64,000 nucleotides of DNA, from positions 1 through 64,000 of IMG/VR virus record IMGVR_UViG_3300033153_007973. The stretch is one strand, 5' to 3'. Of the stretch, positions 1 through 59,659 are shown piece by piece (the first letter of the stretch is position 1; the number at the start of each line of letters is the position of its first letter). The notes below the pieces were generated by a model. The model worked only from the letters and a program-made list of their open reading frames with translations. It had not been told where the DNA came from and searched no databases. The position numbers were made by a program, and so were the translations under genes.

Positions 1-540
1 TAATTGAGGAATAGCATTGAATGCAAGTAGTCGTGCGAGTCCTTTTACAACAGAGGTCTTACCGACACCAGTTTTACCAATAACAAATGGAACTCTGTTC
101 TTTCTAGCTATGCATGCTGCTAGTTGTGTGATTTCATGTAAGCGACCTACTATTGGTTCTTCTAGGGAGTCCAGGCACATGTTCCCTGGCATTTCTACCT
201 TTGATGCTACCCTTGTTCCACTCTCTGATAGAATGTAGCTGTATAAGTGGTTGCTTGTGTATTTAGCTATCTTAGCAGCAGCACATACGATATCAGTGCT
301 CTCTATTTCATTGGATAATCGGGATCTGGATATCGAACTAGCAACTAAGAGCACCTCATTCATGGTGGTCTTCTTGTTGCCGGCCTTAGTGGCGATTTCT
401 TTAAGCATGACATCATTATCTCCGAGTTGTTCGGTTCTTGTCATAGCATTCGAAATGCATCTTGTTAGTGAGTTAATCGTCTTTGGGGACGAGTCAAACT
501 CTCTTAATATTGCTTTTGCAAGCCTACTTACGCTCTCCAT
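1..540 (-). CDS. ClpA/ClpB/ClpC-family AAA+ ATPase, N-terminal part (runs off window start; not in ORF track)
   Basis: Manual translation from ATG at 540 (AGGAG upstream) gives ...EEPIVGRLHEITQLAACIARKNRVPFVIGKTGVGKTSVVKGLARLL..., matching Clp NBD1 'DPVIGR..EI......RR.[22 protein letters not shown]'. Confidence 0.8.
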   Translation of the reverse strand, partial: MESVSRLAKAILREFDSSPKTINSLTRCISNAMTRTEQLGDNDVMLKEIATKAGNKKTTMNEVLLVASSISRSRLSNEIESTDIVCAAAKIAKYTSNHLYSYILSESGTRVASKVEMPGNMCLDSLEEPIVGRLHEITQLAACIARKNRVPFVIGKTGVGKTSVVKGLARLLAFNAIPQL

Positions 541-554
541 GTTTTCTCCTTTGT

Positions 555-597
555 AAAAAGGGGGACACGAATGATACATTGACCATTCGTGTCCTCC
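555..597 (-). terminator. Rho-independent terminator after the RNAP gene
   Basis: Minus strand GGAGGACACGAATG-loop-CATTCGTGTCCCCC followed by TTTTT. Confidence 0.7.
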
Positions 598-607
598 ACT
601 GTGTCAG

Positions 608-3600
608 TTACTTCGACGTATCCGACATCACCATTGTGTTGCTTCTTGAAGCCATTTGAAGGAAGAGACTTACAATGCTCCCGTCATCACCTTGAGCCGC
701 TGCTCGATGGAGACTTATAACTCCTCCGCTCATTATGGAATGAGCAACTGGTGTTGTCCTTGCGCATATTACGCTGACGCCGGACTGCCACTTACCACCT
801 TTAAACATGCTTTCGACCACCTTCTGCGCGGTCTCTGGCAGGCGCACGAGCTTTGAGAGCTCGTCCTGCAGTTCCTGTCTTGGGACTGCTTCCAGTGACC
901 TTAGCATATTTGTTACTATATCTAGAGTAGCCTTTTGCCCTTCACTATTCTTACTGTTTAGAGCAGGCTGTGCGAGTGAATGGTAGAGATCATTTGCATA
1001 TGTAATCCCTACTCTACCATGATCTTGCACCATGATATTTCGCATGATATTACCAATGTTACCGGCATTTGCAGCACCTTCTTTCATAAATCTGAACTCG
1101 GCTGCTGCAGCTGCCTGACCTTTAACTATGTGCTCAATGCTGACTCTTCCCTTCATATACCTGTTGAAGTCAGCATTTTTCTCTTTGCTATATCTGTCGC
1201 GGATATCTCTCCAGTTTTCGCTGGTACCAGTGGACATTGAAAACCGAAAGTCTACTTTCCGCTTCATGAGATTTTCGCGGGGAGAGATTTTGAGCCCCTT
1301 TAAGGCTTTGGAACAAGAAAGCATGTTGAAATACTTGGCGATCCAGATTTTGCTCAAGTCTGCTTTTGCCTTTGCTCCTAATGGAGCATATGCAATCATT
1401 GTATCGCCATCAAAGTCACCATCGAAAACAGTAACTAATGCTGGATTGAAGCGAATTGTGTTTCCCTTCCATACTAGCATTCTCATGCCTGCTACGTTGT
1501 TTACCTGATGTGCCGGATTTCGGCTGATTAGGCATCTTGCCTTTTGGCGTTTCAGGATAGAATTAATGGATCCTGTTGTTAGGTCCATCCAGTCATCTTC
1601 CGGAATCATATAGGATTTTCGGAAATCGGCAGATGCACACCATTTCTTAAATAGCCGAATTGGAATCTCGCATGTTGTCATGTCTAGTTGTGGATTACCC
1701 GATATTACTGCATGGCAGCTTCTGATAACTCTTGGAAATGCCAGCATTCGGATTATACCTGTCTTCCTGAACAGACGCTTTGCGATACCATTCATTACCA
1801 TGTTGAACATTTGATTTGAGCGAGTTATCATACTTCGCTCTATCCATGGATTGTCATATCCTCCAGCTTTGTGCTTTTCGAAGTTCTGGAAGTATACGAG
1901 CAATGTGTTCAATGCGTTCTGAACATCCGAAACTGTGAAACTTCCATTATTGAGCATATGGGCTTTTAGCGTTTTCGGTACTCTGATGTACATTTCGCCA
2001 TCCGAGCACACATATACATCTTCGGTTTTCACTTTATCTCGGCCCATTCGTGCATTTCGCTCAAATTGGGTTGGGTCATATGATGGTACATTTATCGATC
2101 TTGCGAATGCACCTAAAATTAACTTCATGTCTTTTGGAACTCGAACATAGCCATTTGACTTTAGAAGCCGTGGATCTAGAACTGTTCTCTCACGTAGTTC
2201 TGATTCCACGATATCAGTTTCAGCTGTAAGTGCTGTTCGGTCGATTGCTGTATCGATCACAATCCCATCCATTTGCGATTTCGGCACCAAGAAGCCATTT
2301 CTGGATTTCTTAATAAATCCGCCTTCTAGTGTAAATCCGAAACATTGCATATGATCGATTGTCGCCTCTTCCGCTTGCGTTTTGCGTACTTCGAGGACTA
2401 TCTCTTTTATGAGCTCATCCGCATTAACAGAGTATAAGCTAAACATAACATCAGCAAGAGTATACATACCTTTACCGCGGGGAGCGACTCCTCTATAGTC
2501 CATTAGGACATCCCTGCTGGCCTTAGCCTTTGATTCGGCATGTTGTTCAAGTCGAAAGTATCTAACCCAACCATAGCCCACGTTTTCATACCAGCTACCA
2601 TTTGTCCAGTCTACAACTAGTGCTTCTCGAGGTAGTTTAACTTCTTTGAGTTTCTTCGTAGCATCTTTGAATGAAATGTCATTTGCCAAAAGGGGCATTT
2701 TGCCTTGTGTTGTCTTTCGGGCATATATGCTATACATTTCTTCAAGAATTCGACTCGGACAGCACCTTTTTCCGACATATGGTGGAACGATGATATCTAC
2801 TGGTTGATCATTTATCTTTGGCATATCTTTTCTTGGCAGGATTTTTGCCACAATAACCTTGTTGCCATGATGATCTGCCAGTTTGTCACCGATTGATAAT
2901 CTTAAGGGATAACTCGATTCAACTTGTATATACTTTACGTTTTCATCGGAGTCGTCTCCATTCTCGATTCTTATGTCCGTCACGATAGCTGTTCTCTGTA
3001 GAGATGATCGCATAGGTCCGGCTTTGCATTTCCCGAGGTGTCCTCTGTTTACATATGCATCTAGAGTGTTCACCGCGGAGCGGAACTTCTGGATCATCTC
3101 TGCAGGATTGATTCGCAGAGGTTGTACCGCCAATTCTGCATCTCTGGCTTTGAAGATATCATAGTGTTTGACAATTGTTATGAATTCTTCAGATGCTTCT
3201 TTCGAAATGACACAGCCATCTTCATGAGTATATCCATAATACTCCATTCTTGCTGCCAGAAGATTTCGACCATGGGGTCGGAATTCTGGCTCATCATTCA
3301 TGTCTGCTTCTGGATTTAACATGAGAGGAGGCTCATCGTAGAGTAACTCACATGCTTGTGTTGTATATCTGGCCACGACTTGTCTGTTCGGCGAGATATG
3401 TCGATGAAATGGGTTGTGAGCAAAGATCCAGCTTACTGGGTACTTACCATATGCAATGACATCTCCATCGCTAGTGATTTTGGTTCCCAAACTCAGGTGT
3501 ACTATCTCACCTGCTTTTCCGCTCTGTTGGGTATCACTCATGACAAGATATTCGTTATTGTAAATCTTTTCTGGAGCTCCAAATGGAAGCACAACCTTGC

Positions 3601-4234
3601 CTGCTACATCTCTAGCTTTTAGACGGCTAGGAATATACTCCATTCTGAGCGAGTTTTCGTTGGATACTATTCTTTGAAGCATACCCTGACTGATATTCTC
3701 ACATGCAAACTGATACAGCTTGGAGACTACTTTCTCGTATATCAGGGTATTCTTCCTTACGAGGCGCCATCGGGCAGCATTGTAGCACGATGGTAACGTA
3801 GTTGCGATAACTTTCTTGAATTCACTGAAGTTCAGATACCTGCTCTCTGGTATCCATCCGAAGGTTTGTTTAAACCTGGCTAATTCAGCATCACTGAATA
3901 CCGCACGTTGCAGTATTCTCTCGGTAGCTGTTCCATCGAACGTAGAAGCACGATGATGCTCATGTGGAATATGAAGCATCTTCTTTTCCCAGTTGTACTT
4001 AAGAAATTGTGTAATGGATACTTCTTGGTCATGTGTGATGCATACTGGTGATAACATTACATAATACGGTGGGATCATTCGGTCGTAGTCACGTGCCACG
4101 ACTCTCGCCTTCTTCTCTCCGCGCTTGGTGTTCGCAGTGATGTCGATTTTCATTTCGCCATCTTCGAATAATACACTTAGTTGCGCAGAAGCTCCCGTGG
4201 CGAATTCAACGTGCAGGTCGTTGAAACTCGTCAT
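608..4234 (-). CDS. Single-chain DNA-directed RNA polymerase (fused, minimal beta + beta' like)
   Basis: Beta motifs in order: PFHRH..NRQVVA..TQA, GRNL..YYGYTHEDGCVIS, IGDKLADHHGNKVIVAKILPRKDMP..VDII, YFRLEQHAESK. Then beta' motifs: KTGIIR..PRVIRSCHAVIS, LISRNPAH, catalytic FDGDFDGDTM. Confidence 0.93.
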   Translation of the reverse strand: MTSFNDLHVEFATGASAQLSVLFEDGEMKIDITANTKRGEKKARVVARDYDRMIPPYYVMLSPVCITHDQEVSITQFLKYNWEKKMLHIPHEHHRASTFDGTATERILQRAVFSDAELARFKQTFGWIPESRYLNFSEFKKVIATTLPSCYNAARWRLVRKNTLIYEKVVSKLYQFACENISQGMLQRIVSNENSLRMEYIPSRLKARDVAGKVVLPFGAPEKIYNNEYLVMSDTQQSGKAGEIVHLSLGTKITSDGDVIAYGKYPVSWIFAHNPFHRHISPNRQVVARYTTQACELLYDEPPLMLNPEADMNDEPEFRPHGRNLLAARMEYYGYTHEDGCVISKEASEEFITIVKHYDIFKARDAELAVQPLRINPAEMIQKFRSAVNTLDAYVNRGHLGKCKAGPMRSSLQRTAIVTDIRIENGDDSDENVKYIQVESSYPLRLSIGDKLADHHGNKVIVAKILPRKDMPKINDQPVDIIVPPYVGKRCCPSRILEEMYSIYARKTTQGKMPLLANDISFKDATKKLKEVKLPREALVVDWTNGSWYENVGYGWVRYFRLEQHAESKAKASRDVLMDYRGVAPRGKGMYTLADVMFSLYSVNADELIKEIVLEVRKTQAEEATIDHMQCFGFTLEGGFIKKSRNGFLVPKSQMDGIVIDTAIDRTALTAETDIVESELRERTVLDPRLLKSNGYVRVPKDMKLILGAFARSINVPSYDPTQFERNARMGRDKVKTEDVYVCSDGEMYIRVPKTLKAHMLNNGSFTVSDVQNALNTLLVYFQNFEKHKAGGYDNPWIERSMITRSNQMFNMVMNGIAKRLFRKTGIIRMLAFPRVIRSCHAVISGNPQLDMTTCEIPIRLFKKWCASADFRKSYMIPEDDWMDLTTGSINSILKRQKARCLISRNPAHQVNNVAGMRMLVWKGNTIRFNPALVTVFDGDFDGDTMIAYAPLGAKAKADLSKIWIAKYFNMLSCSKALKGLKISPRENLMKRKVDFRFSMSTGTSENWRDIRDRYSKEKNADFNRYMKGRVSIEHIVKGQAAAAAEFRFMKEGAANAGNIGNIMRNIMVQDHGRVGITYANDLYHSLAQPALNSKNSEGQKATLDIVTNMLRSLEAVPRQELQDELSKLVRLPETAQKVVESMFKGGKWQSGVSVICARTTPVAHSIMSGGVISLHRAAAQGDDGSIVSLFLQMASRSNTMVMSDTSK

Positions 4235-4292
4235 TCGTTTCCTCCCAGAGTTTGGTATATTGGCTACAGATGAGCCATTGCTGATATTGTAA

Positions 4293-4688
4293 TTAATCCT
4301 CCTTTTTGAGCTGATCGATTTGTGTTTTTAGTTCGTTGATAATGTCTTCGTCGCCTAATCCGTAGTTTTGTAGCGTTTTTATAAATGCAGTAGATGCTTC
4401 TCTTAGTTTGCGAAGATCATCGAATATTTTCATTAGTCTTCGTCCTGCTATAAGAATATTTGGCCCAACTACTGATCTTGAGTTAAGACTTATTCTAATT
4501 TTCATACTTTCCATGCTACTAAATGATGTATTAATATGTACTTGCATATTTTCACACCATTTTATAACTGCTGCGAGAGTTGTTTGTTTCTCTCGTTTTC
4601 GGTGGGGATGGTTGATATTCAGTTTCTTGTCACTTGTGGGGTCAAATAATTGGCCATTTGGATCATTTTGTGCATGTTTTATTCTCAT
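4293..4688 (-). CDS. Hypothetical protein with N-terminal QLFDP motif
   Basis: 131-aa ORF in gene orientation. Confidence 0.6.
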   Translation of the reverse strand: MRIKHAQNDPNGQLFDPTSDKKLNINHPHRKREKQTTLAAVIKWCENMQVHINTSFSSMESMKIRISLNSRSVVGPNILIAGRRLMKIFDDLRKLREASTAFIKTLQNYGLGDEDIINELKTQIDQLKKED

Positions 4689-4694
4689 AGTTTG

Positions 4695-5096
4695 TTACGA
4701 ATCTCTTTTTGTCCTTTCCCACTCTAGAATACGTGGCATTACTGCTATCTTAAATGCTGTGAGGAGTTTATCAACTCCTTGTGCTGTTACATCATTAGAA
4801 ATCATAGATCTTTCAAGTGTAGCTATAATCTCACACCAAATTTTATTATATGGATCGATTACTTCTCTGATGTTTGACACAGCAATTTTAAGGTTTAAGC
4901 CACTACTACAGAGTTCCATTCCACAAGTGTTAGTTGTTACTCTCACTCCGTTATCTAGGAACTCAATTCTTGCGCGGTTTTCTTTGCACCATTCTTGTGC
5001 GTCTTCTTCCTCTTTCGTCTCTGTCTTCTTCTCTTCTTTAACTTCTTTGATTGGTTCTCCTGGGATGGGGTCGAAGATGTTGTCAATATCGGGCAT
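4695..5096 (-). CDS. Hypothetical protein with N-terminal DNIFDP motif
   Basis: 133-aa ORF with GAGGTG SD. Confidence 0.65.
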   Translation of the reverse strand: MPDIDNIFDPIPGEPIKEVKEEKKTETKEEEDAQEWCKENRARIEFLDNGVRVTTNTCGMELCSSGLNLKIAVSNIREVIDPYNKIWCEIIATLERSMISNDVTAQGVDKLLTAFKIAVMPRILEWERTKRDS

Positions 5097-5260
5097 ATGT
5101 CACCTCTGTATGGATCAAATAAGTCATCGTTACTTTTCAGGACTTTTGATCTCATTTTATTGCCTTCTTTAGTGCTAAGAATAGACAGAACGGCATGATG
5201 ATTATAACCACTACTGCAATAACTAGTATATTAGCTGATGGTGCTTCGCATTTTTCCATT

Positions 5261-5333
5261 TAGCAGGGACTGGATTCGAACCAGTGACCTAGTGGTTATG
5301 AGCCACTCAAGCTAACCTCTGCTCCACCCTGCT
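5261..5333 (-). tRNA. tRNA-Met(CAT), initiator-like D arm; no encoded CCA
   Basis: AGCAGGG/CCCTGCT acceptor, TGGAGCAG..GGTTAGCT D arm, anticodon loop CTCATAA, T loop TTCGAAT. Confidence 0.9.
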
Positions 5334-5381
5334 GTTGTTTCTGTTTTAACTTGTGATATTCCTTGAAAGCATAAAGAAAAA

Positions 5382-5697
5382 GCATCTTCTAATGACAGCC
5401 AGTTGTGTGTGGATGCCGAGAGTAGCTACACATGATCTGGATTTCTCCAGTGTCGGAATTCACCGAACACCATGTCGTAAGTCTTTTGTCCTGACACATG
5501 ATAACCCGAGTTTAGTCACCTGGGTAGGGTGTGAGTCGTGATGTCGTGAGTCATAAGTCGTTATATTTGAGTCGTGGATCGCTAATGCGATACCAATCTG
5601 AATATAGGTTTCAGGCCTATTCCTCAGTGAGTTTGATCACGATATCGTTCGTGTCAAGGACGCTCTCTATTTCCTCTGTTTACATCACAGAAGATGC
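5382..5697 (-). ncRNA. Candidate ~315-nt structured RNA with short internal repeats, downstream of the coiled-coil gene
   Basis: Ends pair (GCATCTTCT/AGAAGATGC) followed by a T run; internal repeats CACGAC/AACGAC/TATGAC/TACGAC; no credible ORF. Confidence 0.5.
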
Positions 5698-5706
5698 AGT
5701 TTTTGT

Positions 5707-6243
5707 CTAGTCGACCATGTTTGTGGTGGCATTTATCACTTCCAAACGCGATTCAATCTCGTCCAGAAGGTCCTGCCACGCACGCTGTTTCTTGCGCTTG
5801 TCGTCCTCGTTGAACATCGCCATGGCAGTGGGTGTTTTCTCGTTCTCCCGAGCACGCATGCTCAGACGACTCATGCGGCTTTCTGCTTCGTGCAGGTTCA
5901 GGGCGTTGTACGCCAGCGATACAAGGTTCTTGGTCTTCCTGCGGATGTACAGCAGATCAGCCAGAGAGTACTCTTTCCCTTGGATCGTGACTTTGACGGA
6001 CATGTTAGTTCGATCAATCTGGAGCTTCAGTCCGCGCATCTCACGTTCCATGCTTTCGACAGATTGGACAAGGGAAGCGACTTTGGCGGTCTGTTTCTCT
6101 TTTGTCTCGAACCGAGGGATCTCGGTAGAAACCACGGATGCATACTCCTGAATGTCAGTAGCTGTATCGTGACAGCGCTTCTCCAGGACCCGGAGTCTTT
6201 TCAGCCCCTCGATGATCTTTTCTGGTTTCTTCTCTTCTGGCAT
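5707..6243 (-). CDS. Coiled-coil protein resembling the DIP1984/DUF6847-like family
   Basis: IIEGLKRLRVLEKR at the N-terminus and DEIESRLEVINATT at the C-terminus; strong AAGGAG SD. Confidence 0.6.
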   Translation of the reverse strand: MPEEKKPEKIIEGLKRLRVLEKRCHDTATDIQEYASVVSTEIPRFETKEKQTAKVASLVQSVESMEREMRGLKLQIDRTNMSVKVTIQGKEYSLADLLYIRRKTKNLVSLAYNALNLHEAESRMSRLSMRARENEKTPTAMAMFNEDDKRKKQRAWQDLLDEIESRLEVINATTNMVD

Positions 6244-6291
6244 TGTGTTCTCCTTTTAATCGTGATGTAATATAGCTGATACTTGACCATG

Positions 6292-6909
6292 TCAAGTCTT
6301 TTTCTTACGTTTTTCGAGTTCTCGCATTGTCTTTACTTTGTCCTCGACGAATTGTAGTTGCTCTTTAAGATCGTTTCTGACCTGTAGTAATAGTTCTGTT
6401 GAAACAACTTTGATCTTGTGTTCTTCTATAAATGCATGCATATCTTTAGCCTTATAGAAGTGCATCAAGAGATGCCATTTGTTATCTACTGTGTCTGGCA
6501 TAACGCTGGCTCTTACCTCAACCTTTCCGTTCTTGCTGTACCATGAAAAGTCGAATGAGTCTCTAACAAGTGGTCTGATTCCATCTATGACATACTTTGG
6601 TAGTGCTCGTCTTGTTCTGATAGTGAAGTTATGAAAATGAGGACTATATTCCCAAGTGAAGTATCTCATGACATCGTTGGAGAAGATGACTACCGATGCA
6701 ATCTTTAGTTTCTGCTGGATTATCTTGTGTTCTCGGGCACGGAGTGCATCCATATGTTTCTTTGCGGCACGGAACATGCCTCTGACAGTAAACCTTATAT
6801 CTTTGGACTGTGTTTTTGGCACTTTTTGCATACGAATATGTAACTCCCTTTCGTGATACAGTGTATCTGGATTATCCAGTGATGTCTGCACCAGAGCTCT
6901 TTCCACCAA
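6292..6909 (-). CDS. Hypothetical protein
   Basis: 205-aa ORF in operon orientation; start uncertain. Confidence 0.5.
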   Translation of the reverse strand: MVERALVQTSLDNPDTLYHERELHIRMQKVPKTQSKDIRFTVRGMFRAAKKHMDALRAREHKIIQQKLKIASVVIFSNDVMRYFTWEYSPHFHNFTIRTRRALPKYVIDGIRPLVRDSFDFSWYSKNGKVEVRASVMPDTVDNKWHLLMHFYKAKDMHAFIEEHKIKVVSTELLLQVRNDLKEQLQFVEDKVKTMRELEKRKKKT

Positions 6910-6984
6910 TCTTTGATGTCATACTTCTTTAAGAACCACTTCATACGGAGTTTGGTCTTTAGGTTCATAAAAGATGCGACAACC

Positions 6985-7647
6985 TCACGGTATTTCTTCA
7001 ATAGGCACATGTAAGTCTTCCGGAGTGGTTTTGTAGATTTCGGAGCATTCTGGGCTCCAGGGTTCTTTGTATTCAATTTTGAGCTCCTTGCAAAGTTCTT
7101 GAATGAACGGTAGCCAACCTTTATACCATATATGAAGTATGTGGCTATCGCAAGTCTTCTGTATCAGGATGAACTCCCAATCATCATACAGGTTCGGTTT
7201 GCCTATGCTATCCGCGAAATCACGAAGTTTATCCATGATCCAATGAGCTACCCAATGTGCACCGCTGGTTTCCGTGGGCATGTTATCCTTGATATAGTCA
7301 TACAAAGCTCGAGCTTGTTTCCTATCGAGTTCATTTTCTCTCCGTAACTCAGTAACCTGCGACAAGAATGCTTTCTCTGTTTCCTCTTGGAGATATTGGG
7401 AGTTGACCAGATCCGGGAACAGCTTCTTCGACCAATAGTCGAAGCCGATCCTCGTGAGGAATTCCTTAATCCCGCAACCGCAGGATCCCCATGTATACAT
7501 ACCCTGTGTGTCAGCACAGGCAACAATGACTACACCACCTTGATAATCATCTCTCTTGAAGGGTTCAATTGATACACGCATTTCATCGAGCCATTTTCTC
7601 TGAATAACATATGTCTCTATTTGTTTTTTGGTGATTATTACGCTCAT
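6985..7647 (-). CDS. Hypothetical phage protein
   Basis: 220-aa ORF with AGGAG SD. Confidence 0.6.
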   Translation of the reverse strand: MSVIITKKQIETYVIQRKWLDEMRVSIEPFKRDDYQGGVVIVACADTQGMYTWGSCGCGIKEFLTRIGFDYWSKKLFPDLVNSQYLQEETEKAFLSQVTELRRENELDRKQARALYDYIKDNMPTETSGAHWVAHWIMDKLRDFADSIGKPNLYDDWEFILIQKTCDSHILHIWYKGWLPFIQELCKELKIEYKEPWSPECSEIYKTTPEDLHVPIEEIP

Positions 7648-7971
7648 TTAAGCACTCCTACTGGATATCAGATATTTTGGTCCGGTCCATGTTACATCCC
7701 ATGGAGGTTGGTATATATTGCCTCTTGCATGTTTGGCTGGTCTTGTCCAGCATGCAGCTCTTAGGATGTCGCCATTTGATTTGTCAACAAAGCCCCAGAC
7801 GTGGCGACCATTTATGCCATCTTGCGTTACAATAAGCTTAATGTATTTGTTGCCTTCAGAGTGTCTAATTGCTTGTTCGCGTCCTATTGCTTCACATAGT
7901 AGTTTATCTATGTGTTCTACAAGGCGAGAGAGTGCTGCATCGAATTCAAGGTTTCTTTGGATTGATCTCAC
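7648..7971 (-). CDS. Conserved small phage protein
   Basis: KYIKL..VWGFVDK.NGDILRAA.W..PAKHARGNI pattern is common in large phages. Confidence 0.65.
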   Translation of the reverse strand: MRSIQRNLEFDAALSRLVEHIDKLLCEAIGREQAIRHSEGNKYIKLIVTQDGINGRHVWGFVDKSNGDILRAACWTRPAKHARGNIYQPPWDVTWTGPKYLISSRSA

Positions 7972-8426
7972 ATACGATCCTTTAACATATAAAGTGCAAA
8001 TCTATATTTGTCCTTAAGTGTGCCTTCTTTGAGATCAGACATGTTGTGTTCGATATCGCAGATTTTAATAATTCTAGCGATATTGTGGCAGTCAACTTTT
8101 TGGATGAAGTCAAAATAGTTCTCTCCTTTGTCTTTCTCTCGAGTTAGACATACAACAGTATCAACAATTTCATCAGAGAATTCATCTTGCAGGTTTTCTT
8201 TAGTGTATTCTGTATCTTCGATAACATCATGGAGCCACGCTGCAGCTACTGCTCGATTAATCTGAATGGTGCCGTATATGCCTCTTTCCTTCATCCTTCT
8301 CTGAACTTCCTTTGCTACAGCTTCAGGATGTGTCCAATATGGACATGGGCAGACTAGTGTCTTGCGCATTTGATTCATATGCGCAAGCTTGGCAAACTTT
8401 TCTGCTCTTTCGGTTAGGTTACTCAT
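7968..8426 (-). CDS. HD-domain hydrolase, RelA/SpoT-HD (small alarmone hydrolase / MESH1-like)
   Basis: AEKFAKLAH..Q.RK, PYWTHPEAVA, AAAWLHDVIEDT, IKICDIEHN. Confidence 0.85.
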   Translation of the reverse strand: MSNLTERAEKFAKLAHMNQMRKTLVCPCPYWTHPEAVAKEVQRRMKERGIYGTIQINRAVAAAWLHDVIEDTEYTKENLQDEFSDEIVDTVVCLTREKDKGENYFDFIQKVDCHNIARIIKICDIEHNMSDLKEGTLKDKYRFALYMLKDRM

Positions 8427-9298
8427 TTCTTCTCCTTTATGAGTTGCTGTGCAAAATACTTAACTTCTTTATCTGTCCATGTGTTTTTGCACATGTTATA
8501 CATTAAACAAACTAGCTGTACATTGTCTTTTGTATATCCTTCACTGGGGTTGATTTGATCTATTGATGCTGACCATGGTGATCTAGCACCAACTTGTCTG
8601 CCAGTATCGTTTAATACAAAGGATATGCCAGTTCTCGCACATGAGCAATTTTGCTTACGCAGGAGACCTACTATGAAGTCGGTCGTTATGTTACATGGCA
8701 TCCCGTGCTTCTTTGCCCTGCAGATCGCACCCTTCGCTGTGTAGCTTAGGTTTAGCTCAATGGGTGTCTTCCACTTCCTTCCTTCAGAGAATTTGCGGTT
8801 CCTTTTGTGGGACTCTGATTCATGCTGCTTCCTGCATTTCTCTGAGCAGGTTAGTGGATGCGTAGGTGCGTTATACTCAAAGTCCTTGCCACAAATCTGA
8901 CAAACTGTCTTCTTTATCTTCCAGCGACCCTTCTTGCATCTATTTTCTTGTTGGAAGCAGCCACAACTTTTGGCTGATCCTTGTCGTAGATAGTCTCCTC
9001 TAACTCTTTTTGTGTTTCCACAGTCACATTTGCAAAGCCAGGCTGGTGATTTGGTTATGAGACCATCTCTCTTGATGACAACAAGTCTTCCAAATCTTGT
9101 GTCTGTTAATATCAGGATTCCACCTGCTCTGCATCCACAAGATTTTGTGTGCCCGTTTCTGAGCTTGCTCGTGACTACTTCAGTTTCTCCGCCACAGTCG
9201 CATTTGCAGATCCACGTTTTGCGTTTCTGCCCGTTCTTGTAGGTCTTTCCTGACCCTTCTTTAACAGTCTTCAGATGTCCAAATGTTTGTCCTATCAT
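8423..9298 (-). CDS. Free-standing HNH-type homing endonuclease
   Basis: Two WxCKCDCG...KSCGC repeats plus C-terminal SIDQINPSEGYTKDNVQLVC..YN..K; start at 9298 follows AGGAGG. Confidence 0.8.
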   Translation of the reverse strand: MIGQTFGHLKTVKEGSGKTYKNGQKRKTWICKCDCGGETEVVTSKLRNGHTKSCGCRAGGILILTDTRFGRLVVIKRDGLITKSPAWLCKCDCGNTKRVRGDYLRQGSAKSCGCFQQENRCKKGRWKIKKTVCQICGKDFEYNAPTHPLTCSEKCRKQHESESHKRNRKFSEGRKWKTPIELNLSYTAKGAICRAKKHGMPCNITTDFIVGLLRKQNCSCARTGISFVLNDTGRQVGARSPWSASIDQINPSEGYTKDNVQLVCLMYNMCKNTWTDKEVKYFAQQLIKEKK

Positions 9299-9318
9299 GG
9301 TGGTGCCTCCTAGATAGG

Positions 9319-9347
9319 AGTGTACCACACATTCTAGTCATTGTCAA
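9319..9347 (-). promoter_or_regulatory. sigma70-type promoter for the HNH gene, overlapping an SD-sequestering hairpin
   Basis: TTGACA-17 nt-TACACT; GTGGT..CTCCT/AGGAG..ACCAC inverted repeat. Confidence 0.7.
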
Positions 9348-9350
9348 CGG

Positions 9351-10493
9351 TTATTCGTAATCACGAATTATGCCGACTGGAAACTGAGGAACTGCCTTGC
9401 CATTTCCATCGGTACTACTAGTAATTGTCTGGTATCGTACCGTTAGTTGTTTACCGAGGTATGTGCCTTCTCCAGCTTTGAGCATTTCTTGACGATAAAG
9501 AAGAGTTCCTTTTGGGCGAACATTGAATTCTGCACCATCTTTAGTCTTACATTTAAACATAATACAGGTATAATGAATTCCATTTATGTCTTGAGTCTCA
9601 GACTCTACGCCTATGATTTTATATTCTTTCTCTTCCATATCTTTTTTCTTGAGTAAATCATTGCTTCTGTGACCATAAAGGTATTCAGATGCAGCATTAC
9701 GGATGATCGTGCCTTCGAAGCCTTCTTTGATGAAGTCTTTATGGAATTTCTCCATATCGGCTTCAGTTTTACATGGTTCAGTAGCCACGGCTCTGAGGGG
9801 ATTCTTCACCGCTCCTTGCCAACTACTTTTGCTACCCCATCTGTGTTCAAACCTACCTGTATCTGGAGTTGCATCATCGAATATCCAGTATTCGAGTGTT
9901 TGGGTATCTTCGCGAGCTTTCTTGGTTGCTGAGGCAATTCTCTGAAGGCTCCATCCATGATAATAGAGCTCACCATCTAGAGTTTGTCCGGGTCTCATGA
10001 TTTCTTTCAGGCGTTCTATGAGCTTCTTATTCTCTTTCATAACGGCATAGTAGTCCTTACCGTTACGACTGGTCATAGTCAAGCTACCATCATCATTCAT
10101 GGTGGTCATGCAGCGAACGCCATCAAGCTTTGGTTGGACATATGCTGGCCATGTTATATGTTTCTTGCGTTCTTTGTACTTATGTGCTAACATTGGGCGT
10201 GTGGAGATATGCTTTTCGGCGTCCTTCATAGATTCTGTATACTCTTTGCGTTCCTTCTTGTGTGTCCAAGATGCTTCTGCTTCAAGATATGCTTGCTCGA
10301 GGGGTGTAGTGGCGTTTGACTTACCAATATTCTTTCCCTCTGTAATGGTTTTGCTACGTTCGATCATCTTACCATCGACTTTGCCATTATTGGTAACAAT
10401 AATTGCATACTTACCGACACTTGCCACGCGGATGGACCATTGCTTGATTCCTCCATCCTTGGACTTTGCATAGAGTATTGGAAACTTAGTCAT
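9351..10493 (-). CDS. ATP-dependent DNA ligase
   Basis: PMLA, QPKLDGVRC, LDGELY, FEGTIIR, RSNDLLKKK, TVRYQ, PQFPV. Confidence 0.93.
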   Translation of the reverse strand: MTKFPILYAKSKDGGIKQWSIRVASVGKYAIIVTNNGKVDGKMIERSKTITEGKNIGKSNATTPLEQAYLEAEASWTHKKERKEYTESMKDAEKHISTRPMLAHKYKERKKHITWPAYVQPKLDGVRCMTTMNDDGSLTMTSRNGKDYYAVMKENKKLIERLKEIMRPGQTLDGELYYHGWSLQRIASATKKAREDTQTLEYWIFDDATPDTGRFEHRWGSKSSWQGAVKNPLRAVATEPCKTEADMEKFHKDFIKEGFEGTIIRNAASEYLYGHRSNDLLKKKDMEEKEYKIIGVESETQDINGIHYTCIMFKCKTKDGAEFNVRPKGTLLYRQEMLKAGEGTYLGKQLTVRYQTITSSTDGNGKAVPQFPVGIIRDYE

Positions 10494-10896
10494 AGTAATT
10501 ATCCTCTTCTTTTGTGGTCTCTTCCACGATAGTTTTCTGTCCTTTTCTTTCGTGAGATCTTAGCGTATTCGTAATATGTGCACCGAGAGTTGCATATCGT
10601 TCATTGGTTGAGCATGCGAGAATCCAGCCATCATCCATGGAGAAGATCTTGCTTTCGATCTCCATTGACTCCTTGTTTACGTAGGAAATCTTGTAAGATA
10701 CCTGATCATCTTCTGTATGGTAGAATCGCTTCTCTTCACCAGGTGATCTTGCTGCGTTGGTAAAGCACCAGTTGGCTTTTCCGACTGGTCCTTTTCCATA
10801 TTCTATCTTGTGGTTATCTCCGCACGTGAGACAGCCAATGAGAAAGATTCCGCATAGGAAACCGATGAGTCCGCCAGCCCAGAATTCTCCGTCCAT
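10486..10896 (-). CDS. Hypothetical membrane-anchored protein
   Basis: N-terminal hydrophobic helix. Confidence 0.55.
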   Translation of the reverse strand: MDGEFWAGGLIGFLCGIFLIGCLTCGDNHKIEYGKGPVGKANWCFTNAARSPGEEKRFYHTEDDQVSYKISYVNKESMEIESKIFSMDDGWILACSTNERYATLGAHITNTLRSHERKGQKTIVEETTKEEDNYYD

Positions 10897-11486
10897 TATT
10901 TCTTCTCCTTCTTTGTTATAACCTCATCGACGAGGCCATACTTGACTGCTTCCTCGGCAGTCATGTAATTATTTCTCTCAGTATCGATGGTGATCTTCTC
11001 GATTTTATGACCTGTATGATATGCCAGAATTTCGTCGAGCTTTCTCCTGGTCTTTTTCATCTCCTCGGCTTCGATCATGACATCTGTTTCCTGTCCGGAT
11101 GCGCCGCCAGCCACCTGGTGAATCATTACTTTTGCATTGGGTAGGATCTTACGTTTACCCTTAGCGCCCGCGGTCAGGAGAAGTGACCCCATAGAAGCAG
11201 CCATACCGATGCAGAGAGTACATACATCTGCCTCGATATATTGCATAGTATCATAAATGGCTAATCCCTCGGAGACAATACCACCCGGTGAATTGATATA
11301 GAAGAAGATATCTTTCTTGGGATCCTCAGCTTCAAGGAACAGAAGCTGCGCTGTGATCAATGCAGAGGAAACAGATTCAACTGCCCCATGAAGCATGACT
11401 ACTCGTTCTTTAAGCAGTCTGGAGAAGATATCATAGGATCGTTCACCTCTGCTGGTCTGTTCGATTACGACTGGTACGAGGTTCAT
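10896..11486 (-). CDS. clpP: ATP-dependent Clp protease proteolytic subunit
   Basis: [54 protein letters not shown]. Confidence 0.97.
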
Positions 11487-12039
11487 GTAGTCTCCTTTAA
11501 GTCTGTACTGCCGATACCAGGGACTTCGCTCATGATTTCCCCGATCTTCTCAGCTTCTTTATTGTTATTATATATGTTGCTTCGTGATAGGGTATAGTTT
11601 TTGTAGGACATACAATCTTTCGAGTATGCCTTGTCAGTTCCTGCACGGTTTTCATGTCCAAGTTTACGGTATCGACCGCATGCTGGGCATCTTATGTGTT
11701 TAATCATCGTTGACTCTCCTATATCCGTTAGTTACATTTGAGTATGACCATGATACTCTACCATTTGGCCATTGTATAAGGCAATGGTGTGGCATTACAA
11801 GAGTAATGTCTTGACCATCACTGTTCCTATAGTAAGTATTTGTTCCTTCTCCAATCCAGATCTTAACTCTAATCGGGTCTTTTGGCGGAATGATAATATA
11901 CTCAATGCTATTGTGCTGATTTTCCTTGAAGAGCTGTTCTGCACTCTTCCAGTATGGTTTGGGTCCTTCTGCTGATTTTTGTTGTGTGATAGGTCCACAG
12001 GATAGAACTAGAACGAGCACCACTATTATATATTTCATT

Positions 12040-56920: not shown

Positions 56921-59659
56921 TTAATCTTTCACGTGCTGGTTACGCTTGATCAGATGGTGTGTACCTGCCGCCCGATCAGATATGATACTCAATGTCCCAG
57001 GAGTCAGATTCAAGCGCTTCTCTTCACGCTCGAGGTCTGACTGGATAGCACCCAGGATCTTTTCGTTCTCTTCCTCCTTTCTAACGTCGACCGTAGCCAG
57101 CCAATATAGCCAGCTACGATCAATCACCCGCCTAGCACATGCCAGGACACGCGGGTCGAATCCTGACAGACCACCATACAGCCCCTTGTTATTGCTGCTG
57201 GTGTAACTGATGATACAGATCATGATCATAACCTGCATCTCCTCCAAGGCCACACCGAACTCCTTGGAGAACACGTGAGCTCCAGTATGGAACAACGCAG
57301 CCACTTTCTGCTGACTTGTTTCCATATTGGCATGTGCTCTCTTATCGGACTGCCAAATATCCATAGCCCGACAAATCATGGAGCGATACTTCTCGCGCAT
57401 CACTCCATCGGTGTACATCACTTTCTCCGATAGCTGCTTACCATCCTTGGTGGGTAGAGCAGCCTGTCGACCAGTGATTGGATTGATCCCGATCCGCTCT
57501 GCAACCTTATGCATAATAGGATCAGTCTTCACCATCTCACGTGCCTTGTTATGAATATGGTTCTCAGGTGTTCCGAGTTTCATATCAACTAGAGGCTCGA
57601 AGATCGCCCGCAGGAACGGATCTGAGCGATCGATGCGATGGTGATTACCAGCGATGGACATGAGCTTATCCATATCCACCTCACCAGTGTTAGCGTTAAC
57701 ACAACCAAGCTCATCCAGACCTCCGATGAGTTGCTCCCTGTTTGTATCAACAACCACAATCGTCCGACCGCCTTTCTGCTTGCGATTGAACGACTCGGAA
57801 GCGATCATATGTAACAGTGACCGCGGCCGAAGTGTGAATTTGGGATCGATCTTCTTAGCTGCATCAGTAAACGCGAAGACTGATGCTTTATAATCGATCT
57901 TCCGGACGGAGTGCTTAATTCCATCCAGAAAGCTCTGCAGGAAATGTAGTTTCATCCCCCGCAGGAAATACTGGACATCGTCTCTATAGAAGATGCCCAG
58001 ACGCAGGAATCCCTCTTGGAACCTGCGAAACAGCTGAGTTGCCCGCCCAATCATGAGCGAGTCGAACCCATATCCAGTTGTTGCTACCTGAATCAGCATA
58101 TCAGCAACTGGCTTAGTCACCTTGCATACTTTGCGAAGGTGTCCAACATCATTATTCTCATCCTCATGTACAACCTCAGGAGGACAGATCTCATCCTCGG
58201 GACGCCATGCTAGATTTCTAACGAGCCCGAAGACTTCATCAGGGTACACAACCACGATATCACCATCGAAGTCACCACCCAACTGCCCCATCAGGATAGG
58301 ATTCACCCTGATGCTGTCTCCCTCGAACCCCACCACCTTCACAGTAACGACGGTGTCAGGGAACACAGGATGCCTGGCGATGATGATCTTATCACCAAGC
58401 TCGAAGCCCTTGCCCTTGAAACATGTGGGCAGGATCACATTAAGCGCCCCGATGAGATGTTCAGGTACTGAGTATGAGAAGCGCCCAGCCGTAACTCCGC
58501 GAGTGATCAACCCACGGATTAACGGATAGATCATGCTCCGTGCTTTCTCGAGCATAGATCCAAACTGGGTGCTATCTACTTCACGTAACGCATCCATCAC
58601 TCCCTGTAGAGTGGCAGAGAATTTGCGATGGTCTTCTCCTTCCTCAGGTGCAACACCACGTGACATGACGTACCGTGCCAGGTGGTGATCACCAGTAGAC
58701 ACCGCAGCTGCAAACTCAGTAGCTCTTGTTTTGAGCCAGGTGAGTGGTTTATCCATATCCATCCATCTGGCCTTTGTCAGGAGACTCAAAGATCCGCGAG
58801 CTCCCTTATTCTTCAGATATGCATCCCCAGACTTATGGAGATAGATATCCATGAACAGGGTTCCCAATTCCCCATCCCAGCTGCCTATACCAATAACCTT
58901 CATGGTATCGACAGCTATCTTCATCTCTTTGTCAACATAACGGGAAGTTAACGCACACCCATCCATATTGATAGAGTTGGGTAGTACATAGAACTCTACC
59001 CCCATCAGTACCCCACTCTGCAGAGGTGTGTTACAATACTTGCCTAACTTGAACAGCTTCTGCCCAAGTAGGTTCTTCAGTGTGTCCGGAGTTACGAACA
59101 CAACGCCCCGCTCTGCCATTGCTAGCAGTGGGTCTATCATCTTCACATCTACGTGCTTGGAGACATGTTCTAATATCCAACGCCTCATGTACTTGTGTGA
59201 ACGCCGCTGGATAACACCCTTGAAGATCACAAGTACCTTCAATGATATCCCCAATACCTTCTTAATGGCACTGGAGACCGAACAGTTGATCGTAGCCATG
59301 AGCGGGGCCTGCCCGAACTCAGGTACGACACGCATCTTACCGGGGAACATGTGACGCCTGTTCTCCTTCAGATGTGTCACCATCCCTCCAATGCTCTCCA
59401 GTGCATCATCACACTGAAGACCAAGGAAGCCTTCTCTTGCTTGCACAAAGGCACCACCACATGCCTTCAGTACACGGGCCAGGATACTATCCTGAACCGA
59501 GACGGTGAGCTCCGACCCCTCGATCGGAATGTCCACTACAGGGTAGAGCCGGTCGCCCGACACCTCATCCTGTACTGGGTGTGCCACCATCCATGCCCCG
59601 AAGAACCTCTTCTTCAGGGAGGACAGTGCACCATCCAAGACACTGTTTATCTTGTTCAT
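56921..59659 (-). CDS. Second single-subunit double-barrel RNA polymerase (YonO / cellular RdRP-like)
   Basis: NMDGCALTS; IIIARHPVFP...SIRVNPILMGQLGGDFDGDIVVVY; FLDGIKH; AGGAGG SD. Confidence 0.8.
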   Translation of the reverse strand: MNKINSVLDGALSSLKKRFFGAWMVAHPVQDEVSGDRLYPVVDIPIEGSELTVSVQDSILARVLKACGGAFVQAREGFLGLQCDDALESIGGMVTHLKENRRHMFPGKMRVVPEFGQAPLMATINCSVSSAIKKVLGISLKVLVIFKGVIQRRSHKYMRRWILEHVSKHVDVKMIDPLLAMAERGVVFVTPDTLKNLLGQKLFKLGKYCNTPLQSGVLMGVEFYVLPNSINMDGCALTSRYVDKEMKIAVDTMKVIGIGSWDGELGTLFMDIYLHKSGDAYLKNKGARGSLSLLTKARWMDMDKPLTWLKTRATEFAAAVSTGDHHLARYVMSRGVAPEEGEDHRKFSATLQGVMDALREVDSTQFGSMLEKARSMIYPLIRGLITRGVTAGRFSYSVPEHLIGALNVILPTCFKGKGFELGDKIIIARHPVFPDTVVTVKVVGFEGDSIRVNPILMGQLGGDFDGDIVVVYPDEVFGLVRNLAWRPEDEICPPEVVHEDENNDVGHLRKVCKVTKPVADMLIQVATTGYGFDSLMIGRATQLFRRFQEGFLRLGIFYRDDVQYFLRGMKLHFLQSFLDGIKHSVRKIDYKASVFAFTDAAKKIDPKFTLRPRSLLHMIASESFNRKQKGGRTIVVVDTNREQLIGGLDELGCVNANTGEVDMDKLMSIAGNHHRIDRSDPFLRAIFEPLVDMKLGTPENHIHNKAREMVKTDPIMHKVAERIGINPITGRQAALPTKDGKQLSEKVMYTDGVMREKYRSMICRAMDIWQSDKRAHANMETSQQKVAALFHTGAHVFSKEFGVALEEMQVMIMICIISYTSSNNKGLYGGLSGFDPRVLACARRVIDRSWLYWLATVDVRKEEENEKILGAIQSDLEREEKRLNLTPGTLSIISDRAAGTHHLIKRNQHVKD

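What the first reader, a model, noticed from the sequence alone, without database searches (positions are those of the whole stretch)
608..4234. Minimal single-polypeptide beta-beta' RNA polymerase
Seen: ordered beta motifs followed by beta' motifs, including DFDGD, a bridge-helix-like FMKEGAANAG and a trigger-loop-like LAQPALNSK, all in only 1208 aa. Established: bacterial beta plus beta' total roughly 2700 aa, and phiKZ-like phages split rather than fuse them. This enzyme retains clearly cellular-like motifs yet is a compact fusion, so it may represent a little-described phage RNAP lineage.
Basis: partly seen in the sequence, partly recalled or inferred. Interest (0 to 1): 0.7.

Follow-up and report, generated by a model that had tools for sequence, protein, structure and literature searches.

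The report
Compact fused beta-beta' phage RNA polymerase
An uncultured 234-kb jumbo phage carries a 1,208-residue gene that joins stripped-down versions of both catalytic subunits of a cell-type RNA polymerase into one protein, and its metagenome-only family has not been studied experimentally as far as I could find.

Summary
Window 608-4234 (-) is one open 1,208-aa frame. Pfam finds Rpb2_6 (beta barrel, residues 286-569) followed by Rpb1_2 (beta' barrel, 900-964). The quoted motifs are at residues 940, 1049 and 1087.

An AlphaFold2 model (pLDDT 83, pTM 0.86) matches beta/Rpb2 chains over residues 43-620 (Z 20-24). It matches beta'/Rpb1 chains over 636-1194 (Z 13-15). The beta flap, the clamp coiled-coil, switch 2, a bridge helix and a trigger-loop-like segment are kept. 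Lobes, rudder and jaw are largely lost.

An exhaustive search found about 40 fused homologue clusters of 1,070-1,280 aa, plus smaller and split forms. All are metagenomic and unnamed. No GenBank phage record matched over the full length. YonO, crAss gp66 and P23-45 polymerases are much more distant.

The genome encodes no recognisable alpha, omega or sigma. It does carry two more DFDGD proteins: a 912-aa orphan and a 2,274-aa protein in the virion module.

Best reading: a post-infection, single-chain, cell-type RNA polymerase that transcribes phage genes. Its promoter-specificity factor is unknown. I rate it a new variant of a known kind. The closest architectural analogue is the yeast killer-plasmid polymerase K2ORF6p.

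The parts
608..4234 (-). Gene for the 1208-aa fused beta-beta' RNA polymerase (P0001); the stop codon is at 608-610.
   Evidence: ORF and translation; Pfam Rpb2_6 plus Rpb1_2; AF2 model with pLDDT 83.3.
2345..4234 (-). Beta-like module, residues 1-630. Residues 1-55 are modelled with low confidence.
   Evidence: VIA-align: model 9/43..616/620 matches beta/Rpb2 chains at Z 20-24; Foldseek best hits are bacterial and plastid beta chains.
2903..3181 (-). Flap-like SBHM insert in the beta barrel, residues 352-444.
   Evidence: Matches isolated beta-flap structures 3tbi_B and 3woe_A at Z 6.0-6.2.
2858..2890 (-). Beta barrel motif GDKLADHHGNK, residues 449-459, with the two active-site lysines K451 and K459.
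   Evidence: G449, K451 and K459 are invariant in 37 fused homologues; aligned to GDKMAGRHGNKG of a bacterial beta chain.
611..2329 (-). Beta'-like module, residues 636-1208.
   Evidence: VIA-align: model 636..1194 matches M. tuberculosis beta' 6..1256 at Z 14.9 with 523 residues aligned, and Rpb1 chains at Z 13-14.
1772..1927 (-). Two long helices, residues 770-821, equivalent to the beta' clamp coiled-coil. The rudder that follows it in bacteria is deleted.
   Evidence: Profile alignment to S. aureus beta' 234-335, with a 17-residue gap at the rudder; helices H770-790 and H796-821 in the model.
1694..1768 (-). Switch-2-like segment RKTGIIRMLAFPRVIRSCHAVISGN, residues 823-847.
   Evidence: Aligned to [23 protein letters not shown] of bacterial beta'; K824 and V843 are nearly invariant.
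1343..1537 (-). Beta' barrel (Rpb1_2), residues 900-964, containing RNPAH...DFDGD. The metal-binding triad D940/D942/D944 lies at window 1403-1417.
   Evidence: Pfam; P907, D940, D942, G943 and D944 are invariant in 37 homologues; coordinates checked.
1019..1138 (-). Bridge-helix candidate: a 40-residue helix, residues 1033-1072, containing FMKEGAANAG.
   Evidence: Helix H1033-1072 at pLDDT above 90; K1051, A1055 and G1058 are conserved in 30-34 of 37 homologues.
899..1012 (-). Trigger-loop-like helices, residues 1075-1112, containing LAQPALNSK.
   Evidence: H1075-1096 and H1101-1112 in the model; Q1089 in 30/37, L1092 in 33/37 and K1095 in 36/37 homologues. The position after K1095 (N1096) is Ser, Ala or Asn in the fused family, not His.
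563..594 (-). Intrinsic-terminator-like hairpin (13-bp stem followed by a T-run), directly after the polymerase stop codon.
   Evidence: Consensus scan.
4293..5096 (-). I found no evidence that they belong to the enzyme.
   Evidence: No Pfam or PHROG hit; no homologue next to the polymerase in 80 related loci.
1..579 (-). Start of a 743-aa Clp-like AAA+ gene lying directly downstream; it continues across the record ends.
   Evidence: PHROG 4871 and AAA Pfam hits; full frame reconstructed across the 114-bp terminal repeat; an AAA+ gene also follows the polymerase in L014, one small ORF further on.
56921..59659 (-). Second DFDGD protein (P0002, 912 aa), a candidate divergent single-subunit two-barrel polymerase.
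   Evidence: RHP...GGDFDGD at residues 429-467; BLASTP to the P0001 beta' barrel at E 7e-8; Atlas feature look-alikes are phage RdRP/YonO-type clusters, score 0.91.

Best explanation
The ORF encodes a genuine, probably active, DNA-dependent RNA polymerase of the cellular two-barrel (beta/beta') type, made as one 1,208-residue chain. A pared-down beta module (about residues 1-630: reduced lobes, flap, lysine-bearing barrel) is fused through a short connector to a pared-down beta' module (about residues 636-1208). The beta' module keeps the lid region, clamp coiled-coil, switch 2, the DFDGD barrel, a bridge helix, trigger-loop-like helices and a short C-terminal part.

Shown here: the architecture, the conservation of catalytic residues, and the existence of a family.

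Inferred: the enzyme is synthesised after infection rather than packaged. It needs no alpha or omega scaffold, because the fusion replaces assembly. It transcribes phage middle and/or late genes independently of the host core enzyme. Because the flap and the clamp helices are retained (the two surfaces that hold sigma in bacteria), promoter recognition probably needs a separate specificity factor that has not been identified.
For: - Gene and domains: one open frame with Rpb2_6 followed by Rpb1_2.
- Conservation: 37 fused homologues keep R284, D339, G449, K451, K459, R490, E498, P907, D940, D942, G943 and D944 invariant. This is the pattern expected of an enzyme under selection.
- Homology to solved structures: the family profile matches bacterial beta at 2e-50, beta' at 6e-34 and the AR9 nvRNAP beta-C subunit at 7e-36.
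- Structure: AF2 model with pLDDT 83.3 and pTM 0.86. Beta and beta' matches reach Z 20-24 and 13-15, and the flap Z 6.
- Retained beta' elements: the profile aligns to the lid, coiled-coil and switch 2 of bacterial beta', with the rudder deleted.
- No partner subunits: no RNA_pol_L (alpha), Rpb6 (omega), Rpb1_5, Sigma70_r2 or Sigma70_r4_2 matches anywhere in the 234-kb genome, while the positive controls were found.
- Gene position: it lies in the leftward block with tRNAs, DNA ligase, PolB, primase-helicase and NrdD, not in the structural block at 72-183 kb.
- Host promoters: sigma70-like promoter matches are not enriched in window 1-20000 (51 found against 45.7 +/- 6.8 expected).
Against: - No activity, expression or virion-content data exist, and no sequencing run could be listed.
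- No promoter motif was found.
- No specificity factor was identified, and the flanking genes are not conserved even in the closest relative.
- The trigger-loop histidine of cellular enzymes is not conserved in the fused family, so catalysis may differ in detail.
- The phage has two further DFDGD proteins, so the division of labour among them is unknown.
- The structure is a prediction built from a 61-sequence alignment.
Confidence: 0.7

Rival explanations
1. The enzyme is a minimal core that borrows the host's sigma factor or factors. Retaining the flap and the clamp coiled-coil serves to bind host sigma regions 4 and 2, so the phage enzyme would read host-type or slightly altered promoters.
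For: Flap-like SBHM (Z 6.0-6.2) and coiled-coil helices are retained. The phage has no sigma gene detectable by Pfam. A perfect TTGACA-17-TATAAT site lies at 17498-17470.
Against: Sigma70-like sites are not enriched overall. The host is unknown. phiKZ and AR9 enzymes also keep a flap yet use a phage-specific fifth subunit (established knowledge; PMC7598289, PMC7824862). A single consensus promoter is equally explained by host RNAP transcribing early genes.
Confidence: 0.15
2. The enzyme is packaged in the virion and injected with the DNA to transcribe early genes, as the phiKZ vRNAP, N4 vRNAP, crAss gp66 and P23-45 gp96 are.
For: Jumbo and other phages that avoid host RNAP need an injected enzyme (PMC7598289, PMC10770324). 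The enzyme is a single chain.
Against: The gene sits in the replication and nucleotide-metabolism block, about 70 kb from the structural module. A better candidate exists: a 2,274-aa protein with NRKPTL...DFDGD lies between 2,570-aa and 3,795-aa giants inside the virion module.
Confidence: 0.1
3. It is not the phage's transcriptase. It has another nucleic-acid role (for example replication priming or RNA-templated synthesis, as in QDE-1/RDR enzymes), or it is a decaying relic.
For: Two-barrel enzymes have repeatedly switched template or product (PMC7281927). RDR2 and QDE-1 align at Z 13. The phage has other polymerase candidates.
Against: The phage has its own DnaG-type primase-helicase. The cellular-type features (flap, coiled-coil, switch 2) match beta/beta' more strongly than RdRPs (Z 20-24 and 15 against 13). 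Catalytic residues are invariant across a wide family, which argues against decay.
Confidence: 0.05

Closest known systems
Yeast cytoplasmic virus-like element (killer plasmid pGKL2) RNA polymerase K2ORF6p/K2ORF7p (PMC6211774)
   Same: It is a cellular-clade two-barrel enzyme in which a shortened beta is fused N-terminally to beta' sequence in one polypeptide of about 1,000 aa, with no alpha or omega. Spacing between conserved regions is compressed.
   Different: In the VLE enzyme the C-terminal beta' regions sit on a separate small subunit (K2ORF7p). Almost the whole clamp is missing, including the coiled-coil, lid and rudder. Here one chain carries the bridge helix, the trigger-loop-like helices and a C-terminal part, and the lid region and clamp coiled-coil are retained. 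The host is a bacterial virus, not a eukaryotic cytoplasmic element. I could not compare the sequences directly.
phiKZ/AR9-type jumbo-phage multisubunit RNAPs (PMC7598289; PDB 7OGP, 7S00)
   Same: They are phage-encoded, cellular-like beta/beta' homologues without alpha or omega, found in jumbo myoviruses. The beta-C subunits match residues 262-588 (AR9, 7S00) and 262-882 (phiKZ, 7OGP) at Z 20-22, and the AR9 sequence matches the family profile at E 7e-36.
   Different: Those enzymes split beta and beta' into four or five polypeptides and add a fifth specificity subunit. This one fuses everything and totals less than half the mass. The family profile scores bacterial beta higher (175 bits against 127).
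Single-subunit two-barrel RNAPs of the YonO / QDE-1 / crAss gp66 / P23-45 gp64-gp96 clade (PMC10770324)
   Same: One polypeptide carries both barrels, and they are phage-encoded.
   Different: Those enzymes show almost no sequence similarity to beta/beta' and lack the flap. Here Pfam beta and beta' models hit directly. Structural matches to crAss gp66, P74 gp62 and P23-45 gp96 are only Z 7-9, and to QDE-1 Z 13, against Z 15-24 for beta/beta' chains.
mReC: uncultured Caudovirales with deeply branching beta and beta' (PMC7481178); related fused proteins of about 2,100 aa in IMG/VR
   Same: They are metagenomic tailed phages, some of jumbo size, with cellular-like polymerases. Many IMG/VR relatives are also beta-beta' fusions.
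   Different: mReC membership required separate matches of at least 800 aa to each subunit. The IMG/VR fusions are 2,050-2,150 aa and group with bacterial beta in a beta-core tree. P0001 falls in a separate clade of 39 compact, extra-small and split forms (branch support 0.965).

Membership tests
Two-barrel RNAP, cellular (beta/beta') clade | Beta-type double-psi beta-barrel with the two active-site lysines (GDK...HGNK) | tested here: met
   Pfam Rpb2_6 at E 1.6e-19; K451 and K459 invariant in 37/37 homologues; aligned to the bacterial motif.
Two-barrel RNAP, cellular (beta/beta') clade | Beta'-type barrel with RxP...DFDGD metal-binding triad | tested here: met
   Pfam Rpb1_2 at E 8.4e-11; P907, D940, D942 and D944 invariant.
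Two-barrel RNAP, cellular (beta/beta') clade | SBHM 'flap' inserted in the beta barrel (absent from the RdRP/YonO clade; PMC7824862) | tested here: met
   Model residues 352-444 match isolated flap structures at Z 6.0-6.2. This rests on a predicted structure.
Two-barrel RNAP, cellular (beta/beta') clade | Bridge helix and trigger loop after the beta' barrel | tested here: inconclusive
   A 40-residue helix (1033-1072) and following helices align within beta' chains as far as residue 1256 of M. tuberculosis beta', with conserved K1051/A1055/G1058 and Q1089/L1092/K1095. The cellular trigger-loop His is not conserved, and no residue-level superposition was available.
Two-barrel RNAP, cellular (beta/beta') clade | DNA-templated RNA synthesis | not testable with these tools
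   Needs biochemistry.
phiKZ/AR9-type jumbo-phage multisubunit RNAP | Beta and beta' each split into two or more polypeptides, plus a gp68/gp226-like fifth subunit | tested here: not met
   One ORF spans both modules. The only other match to P0001 in the genome is the barrel of P0002, and no Rpb1_5 match was found. The fifth subunit was not searched for specifically.
YonO / QDE-1 / crAss gp66 single-subunit clade | No flap; similarity to beta/beta' limited to the DxDxD region; RdRP-like fold elements | tested here: not met
   Strong Pfam and PDB beta/beta' matches; flap present; Z 7-13 against these enzymes compared with 15-24 for beta/beta'; no PF05183 match (but that control matched nothing anywhere).
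VLE (killer-plasmid) K2ORF6p-type fused RNAP | Beta fused to the N-terminal part of beta' only; C-terminal beta' regions on a separate small subunit; clamp almost absent | tested here: not met
   The fusion order is shared, but P0001 carries the bridge helix, trigger-loop region and C-terminal part itself, and keeps the coiled-coil. Direct sequence or profile comparison with K2ORF6p was not possible with the sequences held.
mReC phage RNAPs (PMC7481178) | Separate beta and beta' matches of at least 800 aa each, with NADxDGD | tested here: not met
   The total length is 1,208 aa for both modules, and the motif reads GDFDGD. The protein falls in a separate clade in the beta-core tree.

The most novel reading that the evidence does not exclude
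This uncultured jumbo phage runs a host-independent programme with three unrelated-looking two-barrel polymerases: an injected 2,274-aa virion enzyme, a 912-aa YonO-like orphan, and the 1,208-aa fusion. The fusion would be the smallest known polymerase that still has the cellular beta/beta' layout, including the sigma- and NusG-docking surfaces. It would work as a self-sufficient single chain with a new kind of specificity factor, giving a natural 'minimal cellular RNAP'.
Probability: 0.2. Interest if true: 0.85.

Novelty: new variant of a known kind. Interest (0 to 1): 0.62.

Why it matters
Cellular RNA polymerases need about 2,300-2,900 residues in beta plus beta', along with assembly subunits. 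A natural 1,208-residue single chain that keeps both barrels, the flap, the clamp coiled-coil, the bridge helix and a trigger-loop-like element marks out what can be removed from the cellular design.

It would be an attractive target for structure determination. It also bears on how fusion can replace alpha- and omega-assisted assembly, and on whether such enzymes are reduced derivatives or early offshoots. It could serve as an orthogonal transcription tool with a different lineage from T7-type enzymes.

It also extends the known range of phage transcription strategies beyond phiKZ-like split enzymes and the YonO/crAss clade.

Tried and rejected
- **GenBank phage searches.** Megablast of the gene and of window 30-50 kb against phage records found no match. 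tblastn with P0001, P0040 and P0059 gave only short rpoB-like pieces.
- **Word-index protein search.** It returned only cellular rpoB and one 1,479-aa fusion. The exhaustive search was needed to find the family.
- **Promoter discovery.** K-mer enrichment and mismatch clustering in upstream and intergenic DNA gave only Shine-Dalgarno and tRNA T-arm signals, plus a weak ATCTTATATGATAT-like word that is not concentrated in intergenic DNA. I abandoned this line.
- **Host-type promoters.** The sigma70 consensus scan showed no enrichment.
- **Expression data.** No sequencing run was listed for either query, so no expression or transcript-end data could be examined.
- **P0002.** Pfam, PHROG and two word-index searches found no relatives. 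The single-sequence AF2 model is unusable at pLDDT 36. It has no homologue in four related phage records beyond their own polymerase barrels.
- **The 2,274-aa protein.** PHROG, PDB and Atlas gave nothing. BLASTP to the P0001 barrel gave only E 0.012.
- **Upstream ORFs 4293-5096 as accessory subunits.** They have no domain hits and no conserved synteny. For that reason I sent no complex prediction.
- **BK019826.** This record is listed in PMC10770324 Supplementary Data 4 as a non-phiKZ jumbo phage with two 'Bacteria'-profile polymerases. It is not in the phage collection, so I could not check it.
Full report
**Observation**

Window 608-4234 on the minus strand is a single open reading frame of 1,208 codons. 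It starts with ATG behind a GGGAGG ribosome-binding site.

Pfam places RNA_pol_Rpb2_6 on residues 286-569 (E 1.6e-19) and RNA_pol_Rpb1_2 on residues 900-964 (E 8.4e-11). Both are above their curated thresholds. The single sequence matches solved bacterial beta chains at about 1e-11 and beta' chains at about 1e-4.

**Genome context**

The window is the first 64 kb of a 234,008-bp IMG/VR virus record with a 114-bp terminal repeat, rated 100% complete. A second IMG/VR contig carries a 100% identical copy of the gene and runs across the record's ends. The map is therefore circular or permuted, and the gene is not an assembly artefact.

The phage is a jumbo myovirus.
- Terminase, portal, major head and sheath genes lie in a rightward block at 72-183 kb.
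- PolB, a DnaG-DnaB primase-helicase, anaerobic ribonucleotide reductase (NrdD), a RecA-like protein, an intein-containing SF2 helicase and an SbcC-like protein lie in a leftward block.
- That leftward block continues through the record ends into the window, where it also holds DNA ligase, an HNH endonuclease and 11 tRNA genes.

The polymerase gene belongs to this leftward, non-structural block. A strong terminator-like hairpin follows it at 594-563, and then comes a 743-aa Clp-like AAA+ gene.

**Family**

The word-index search saw only cellular rpoB. An exhaustive phmmer scan of 1.84 billion cluster representatives gave 1,303 hits at E<=1e-3, 105 at E<=1e-10 and 11 at E<=1e-30. The hits include:
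- About 40 proteins of 1,070-1,280 aa that align end to end and carry DxDGD at residues 820-1,000.
- An even smaller class of 830-945 aa that lacks the first ~275 positions.
- Forms split into a ~650-aa beta-like protein and a ~550-aa beta'-like protein.

All of those I looked up are metagenomic and either unnamed or 'hypothetical protein'. Some sit on contigs of 137-225 kb.

In an alignment of 37 fused members, the invariant residues are R284, D339, G449, K451, K459, R490, E498, P907, D940, D942, G943 and D944. These include the two barrel lysines and the metal-binding triad.

AlphaFold DB and the ESM Atlas also hold compact relatives, auto-labelled as RNA polymerase. Examples are entries of 1,052 and 1,262 aa, an Atlas cluster of 208 members that is 94% viral, and another cluster of 135 members. 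No GenBank phage record in the INPHARED collection gave a full-length match to P0001 or to two other family members.

**Structure**

With a 61-sequence alignment, AlphaFold2 gave a confident model: mean pLDDT 83.3, pTM 0.86, and 631 residues at pLDDT 90 or above.
- Foldseek's best PDB hits are bacterial and plastid beta chains.
- VIA-align against 48,161 chains matches residues 43-620 to beta/Rpb2-type subunits of plastids, Pol IV, Xanthomonas, Pol I, ASFV and vaccinia at Z 20-24. The AR9 and phiKZ beta-C subunits match from residue 262 onward at Z 20-22.
- Residues 636-1194 match beta'/Rpb1 chains at Z 13-15, with 523 residues aligned to M. tuberculosis beta' 6-1256.
- Residues 352-444 match isolated beta-flap structures at Z 6.
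- RDR2 and QDE-1 reach Z 13. P74 gp62, crAss gp66 and P23-45 gp96 reach only Z 7-9.

A profile of the beta' half aligns to S. aureus beta' 234-480. That stretch covers the lid region, both clamp coiled-coil helices, switch 2 and the catalytic barrel. There is a 17-residue gap where the rudder lies.

After the barrel comes a 40-residue helix (1033-1072) carrying the conserved K..(T/A)A..G motif. It is followed by helices with conserved Q1089, L1092 and K1095. I read these as the bridge helix and trigger-loop helices. The cellular trigger-loop histidine is not conserved in the fused family, so this assignment remains provisional.

In size, the beta module is about 630 residues, against 1,119-1,342 in solved bacterial beta chains. 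The beta' module is about 570 residues, against roughly 1,200-1,520 (chain lengths). The chain is less than half of a bacterial beta plus beta'.

**Relation to other phage polymerases**

The family profile scores bacterial beta at 2e-50 (175 bits), bacterial beta' at 6e-34, and the AR9 non-virion beta-C subunit at 7e-36.

A scan of IMG/VR with one conserved beta motif found more than 476 loci that encode relatives. Among the best 80:
- Most carry fused beta-beta' proteins of 2,050-2,150 aa, or separate beta (~1,120 aa) and beta' genes.
- Only three carry compact proteins.

So fusion as such is common in uncultured phages. Compaction to about 1,200 aa is the rarer feature.

In a FastTree of the beta core (303 columns, 132 sequences, midpoint-rooted), P0001 falls in a clade of 39 sequences: 31 compact, 6 extra-small and 2 split. 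A branch with support 0.965 separates this clade from bacterial beta and the mid-size and large fusions. Nine other compact proteins fall elsewhere. This is a quick tree without archaeal, eukaryotic or phiKZ sequences. It shows a distinct lineage but says nothing about its origin.

**Literature**

The library I could search holds descriptions of the following:
- phiKZ/AR9 split enzymes (PMC7598289, PMC7824862);
- YonO, crAss gp66 and the P23-45 enzymes (PMC10770324);
- mReC, which requires separate subunits of at least 800 aa each (PMC7481178);
- the yeast killer-plasmid enzyme K2ORF6p/K2ORF7p (PMC6211774).

K2ORF6p/K2ORF7p is a fusion of beta with part of beta' that lacks most of the clamp. 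Its authors described the fusion as otherwise unknown. PMC10770324 mentions in passing derivatives of cellular enzymes 'with fused DPBB domains', and lists non-phiKZ jumbo phages with 'Bacteria'-profile polymerases in a supplement. I found no paper that characterises a compact phage beta-beta' fusion. That is absence from this library, not proof of absence.

**How it probably works**

Shown here: the chain has both barrels with intact catalytic residues, and it forms a beta/beta'-like cleft in the model. The genome has no detectable alpha, omega, extra beta' C-terminal piece or sigma domain, while the control genomes all gave hits.

Inferred:
- Fusion replaces the alpha- and omega-assisted assembly of the two large subunits.
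- The enzyme is made after infection, because its gene lies among replication and nucleotide-metabolism genes.
- It transcribes phage genes without the host core enzyme.
- Because the flap and clamp helices are retained, I expect a separate specificity factor rather than intrinsic promoter recognition.

I could not identify that factor. A ResIII/DEAD helicase (genome 206571-208085) has homologues within 10 kb of the polymerase in 12 related loci. This recalls the helicases tied to transcription in phiKZ-like phages and killer plasmids, but it is only a lead.

**Other polymerase candidates in the same genome**

DFDGD occurs in three proteins of the genome.
- **P0002** (window 56921-59659, 912 aa) has RHP...GGDFDGD. 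It aligns to the P0001 beta' barrel at E 7e-8. Its ESM Atlas feature look-alikes are phage RdRP/YonO-type clusters. It has no detectable sequence relatives, and its single-sequence model failed.
- **A 2,274-aa protein** (genome 113448-120272) carries NRKPTL...(45 residues)...SGDFDGD. It sits between 2,570-aa and 3,795-aa proteins in the virion block. That position resembles injected polymerases such as crAss gp66, but no search supported it further.

If both are real polymerases, the phage may have an injected early enzyme and one or two later enzymes. This remains conjecture.

**Verdict**

This is a real, compact, single-polypeptide polymerase of the cellular beta/beta' type, and it belongs to an uncharacterised, metagenome-only phage lineage.

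It fails the membership tests for the phiKZ, YonO/crAss, mReC and killer-plasmid families. The killer-plasmid enzyme is the nearest architectural analogue. I rate it a new variant of a known kind, with interest of about 0.6.

Noticed in passing
window 56921-59659 (-): A 912-aa orphan protein (P0002) with an RHP...GGDFDGD beta'-barrel signature. Its Atlas feature look-alikes are phage RdRP/YonO-type clusters. No sequence relatives were found, and the AF2 single-sequence model is unusable.
   Followed up: partly
genome 113448-120272 (+), = L006:7748-14572: A 2,274-aa protein with NRKPTL...SGDFDGD, flanked by 2,570-aa and 3,795-aa proteins in the virion gene block. The 3,795-aa protein has endolysin-like and exonuclease-like PHROG hits. 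It is a candidate injected polymerase with no database support beyond the motif.
   Followed up: partly
window 1-579 (-) joined to genome 233894-232242: A 743-aa Clp-like AAA+ protein gene spans the record ends, directly downstream of the polymerase. An AAA+ gene also follows the polymerase, one small ORF further on, on a distant 217-kb relative contig (L014).
   Followed up: partly
window 563-594 (-): A strong intrinsic-terminator-like hairpin (13-bp stem plus T-run) lies between the polymerase stop codon and the AAA+ start.
   Followed up: no
window 17470-17498 (-): A perfect TTGACA-17-TATAAT sigma70 consensus lies upstream of ORF 16969-17451, although such sites are not enriched overall in window 1-20000.
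   Followed up: no
window 5261-33341 (-): Eleven tRNA genes (Met, Gln, Arg x3, Cys, Trp, Pro, Thr x2, Asn), all on the minus strand and scattered among small early-region ORFs.
   Followed up: no
genome 206571-208085 (-), = L097:571-2085: A 504-aa ResIII/DEAD-box helicase with homologues within 10 kb of the polymerase gene in 12 of 80 related IMG/VR loci. It may be a transcription-associated helicase.
   Followed up: partly
genome 193441-197193 (-), = L011:6041-9793: A 1,250-aa SF2 helicase interrupted by an intein (Intein_splicing, residues 516-867). The distant relative contig L014 has an intein in a UDG-family gene.
   Followed up: no
genome 198796-200916 (-), = L011:11396-13516: An anaerobic ribonucleotide reductase NrdD (E 3e-182), which suggests an anaerobic host or habitat.
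   Followed up: no
L017-L094 (IMG/VR loci): Many uncultured phage contigs encode fused beta-beta' proteins of 2,050-2,150 aa. Others encode beta' (~900 aa) upstream of beta (~1,010-1,040 aa), or beta (~1,120 aa) with short beta' pieces (~390 aa). This is a broad, little-explored range of cellular-like phage polymerases.
   Followed up: partly
BFVD hits of the P0001 model: The best viral structural hit is a segment of a 'minor tail protein' of Siphoviridae sp. ctnpt50, aligned over about 1,300 columns. Uncharacterised proteins of Acinetobacter phage vB_AbaM_ME3 (798 aa) and Microcystis phage MaMV-DC also align. These may be further unrecognised two-barrel polymerases.
   Followed up: no
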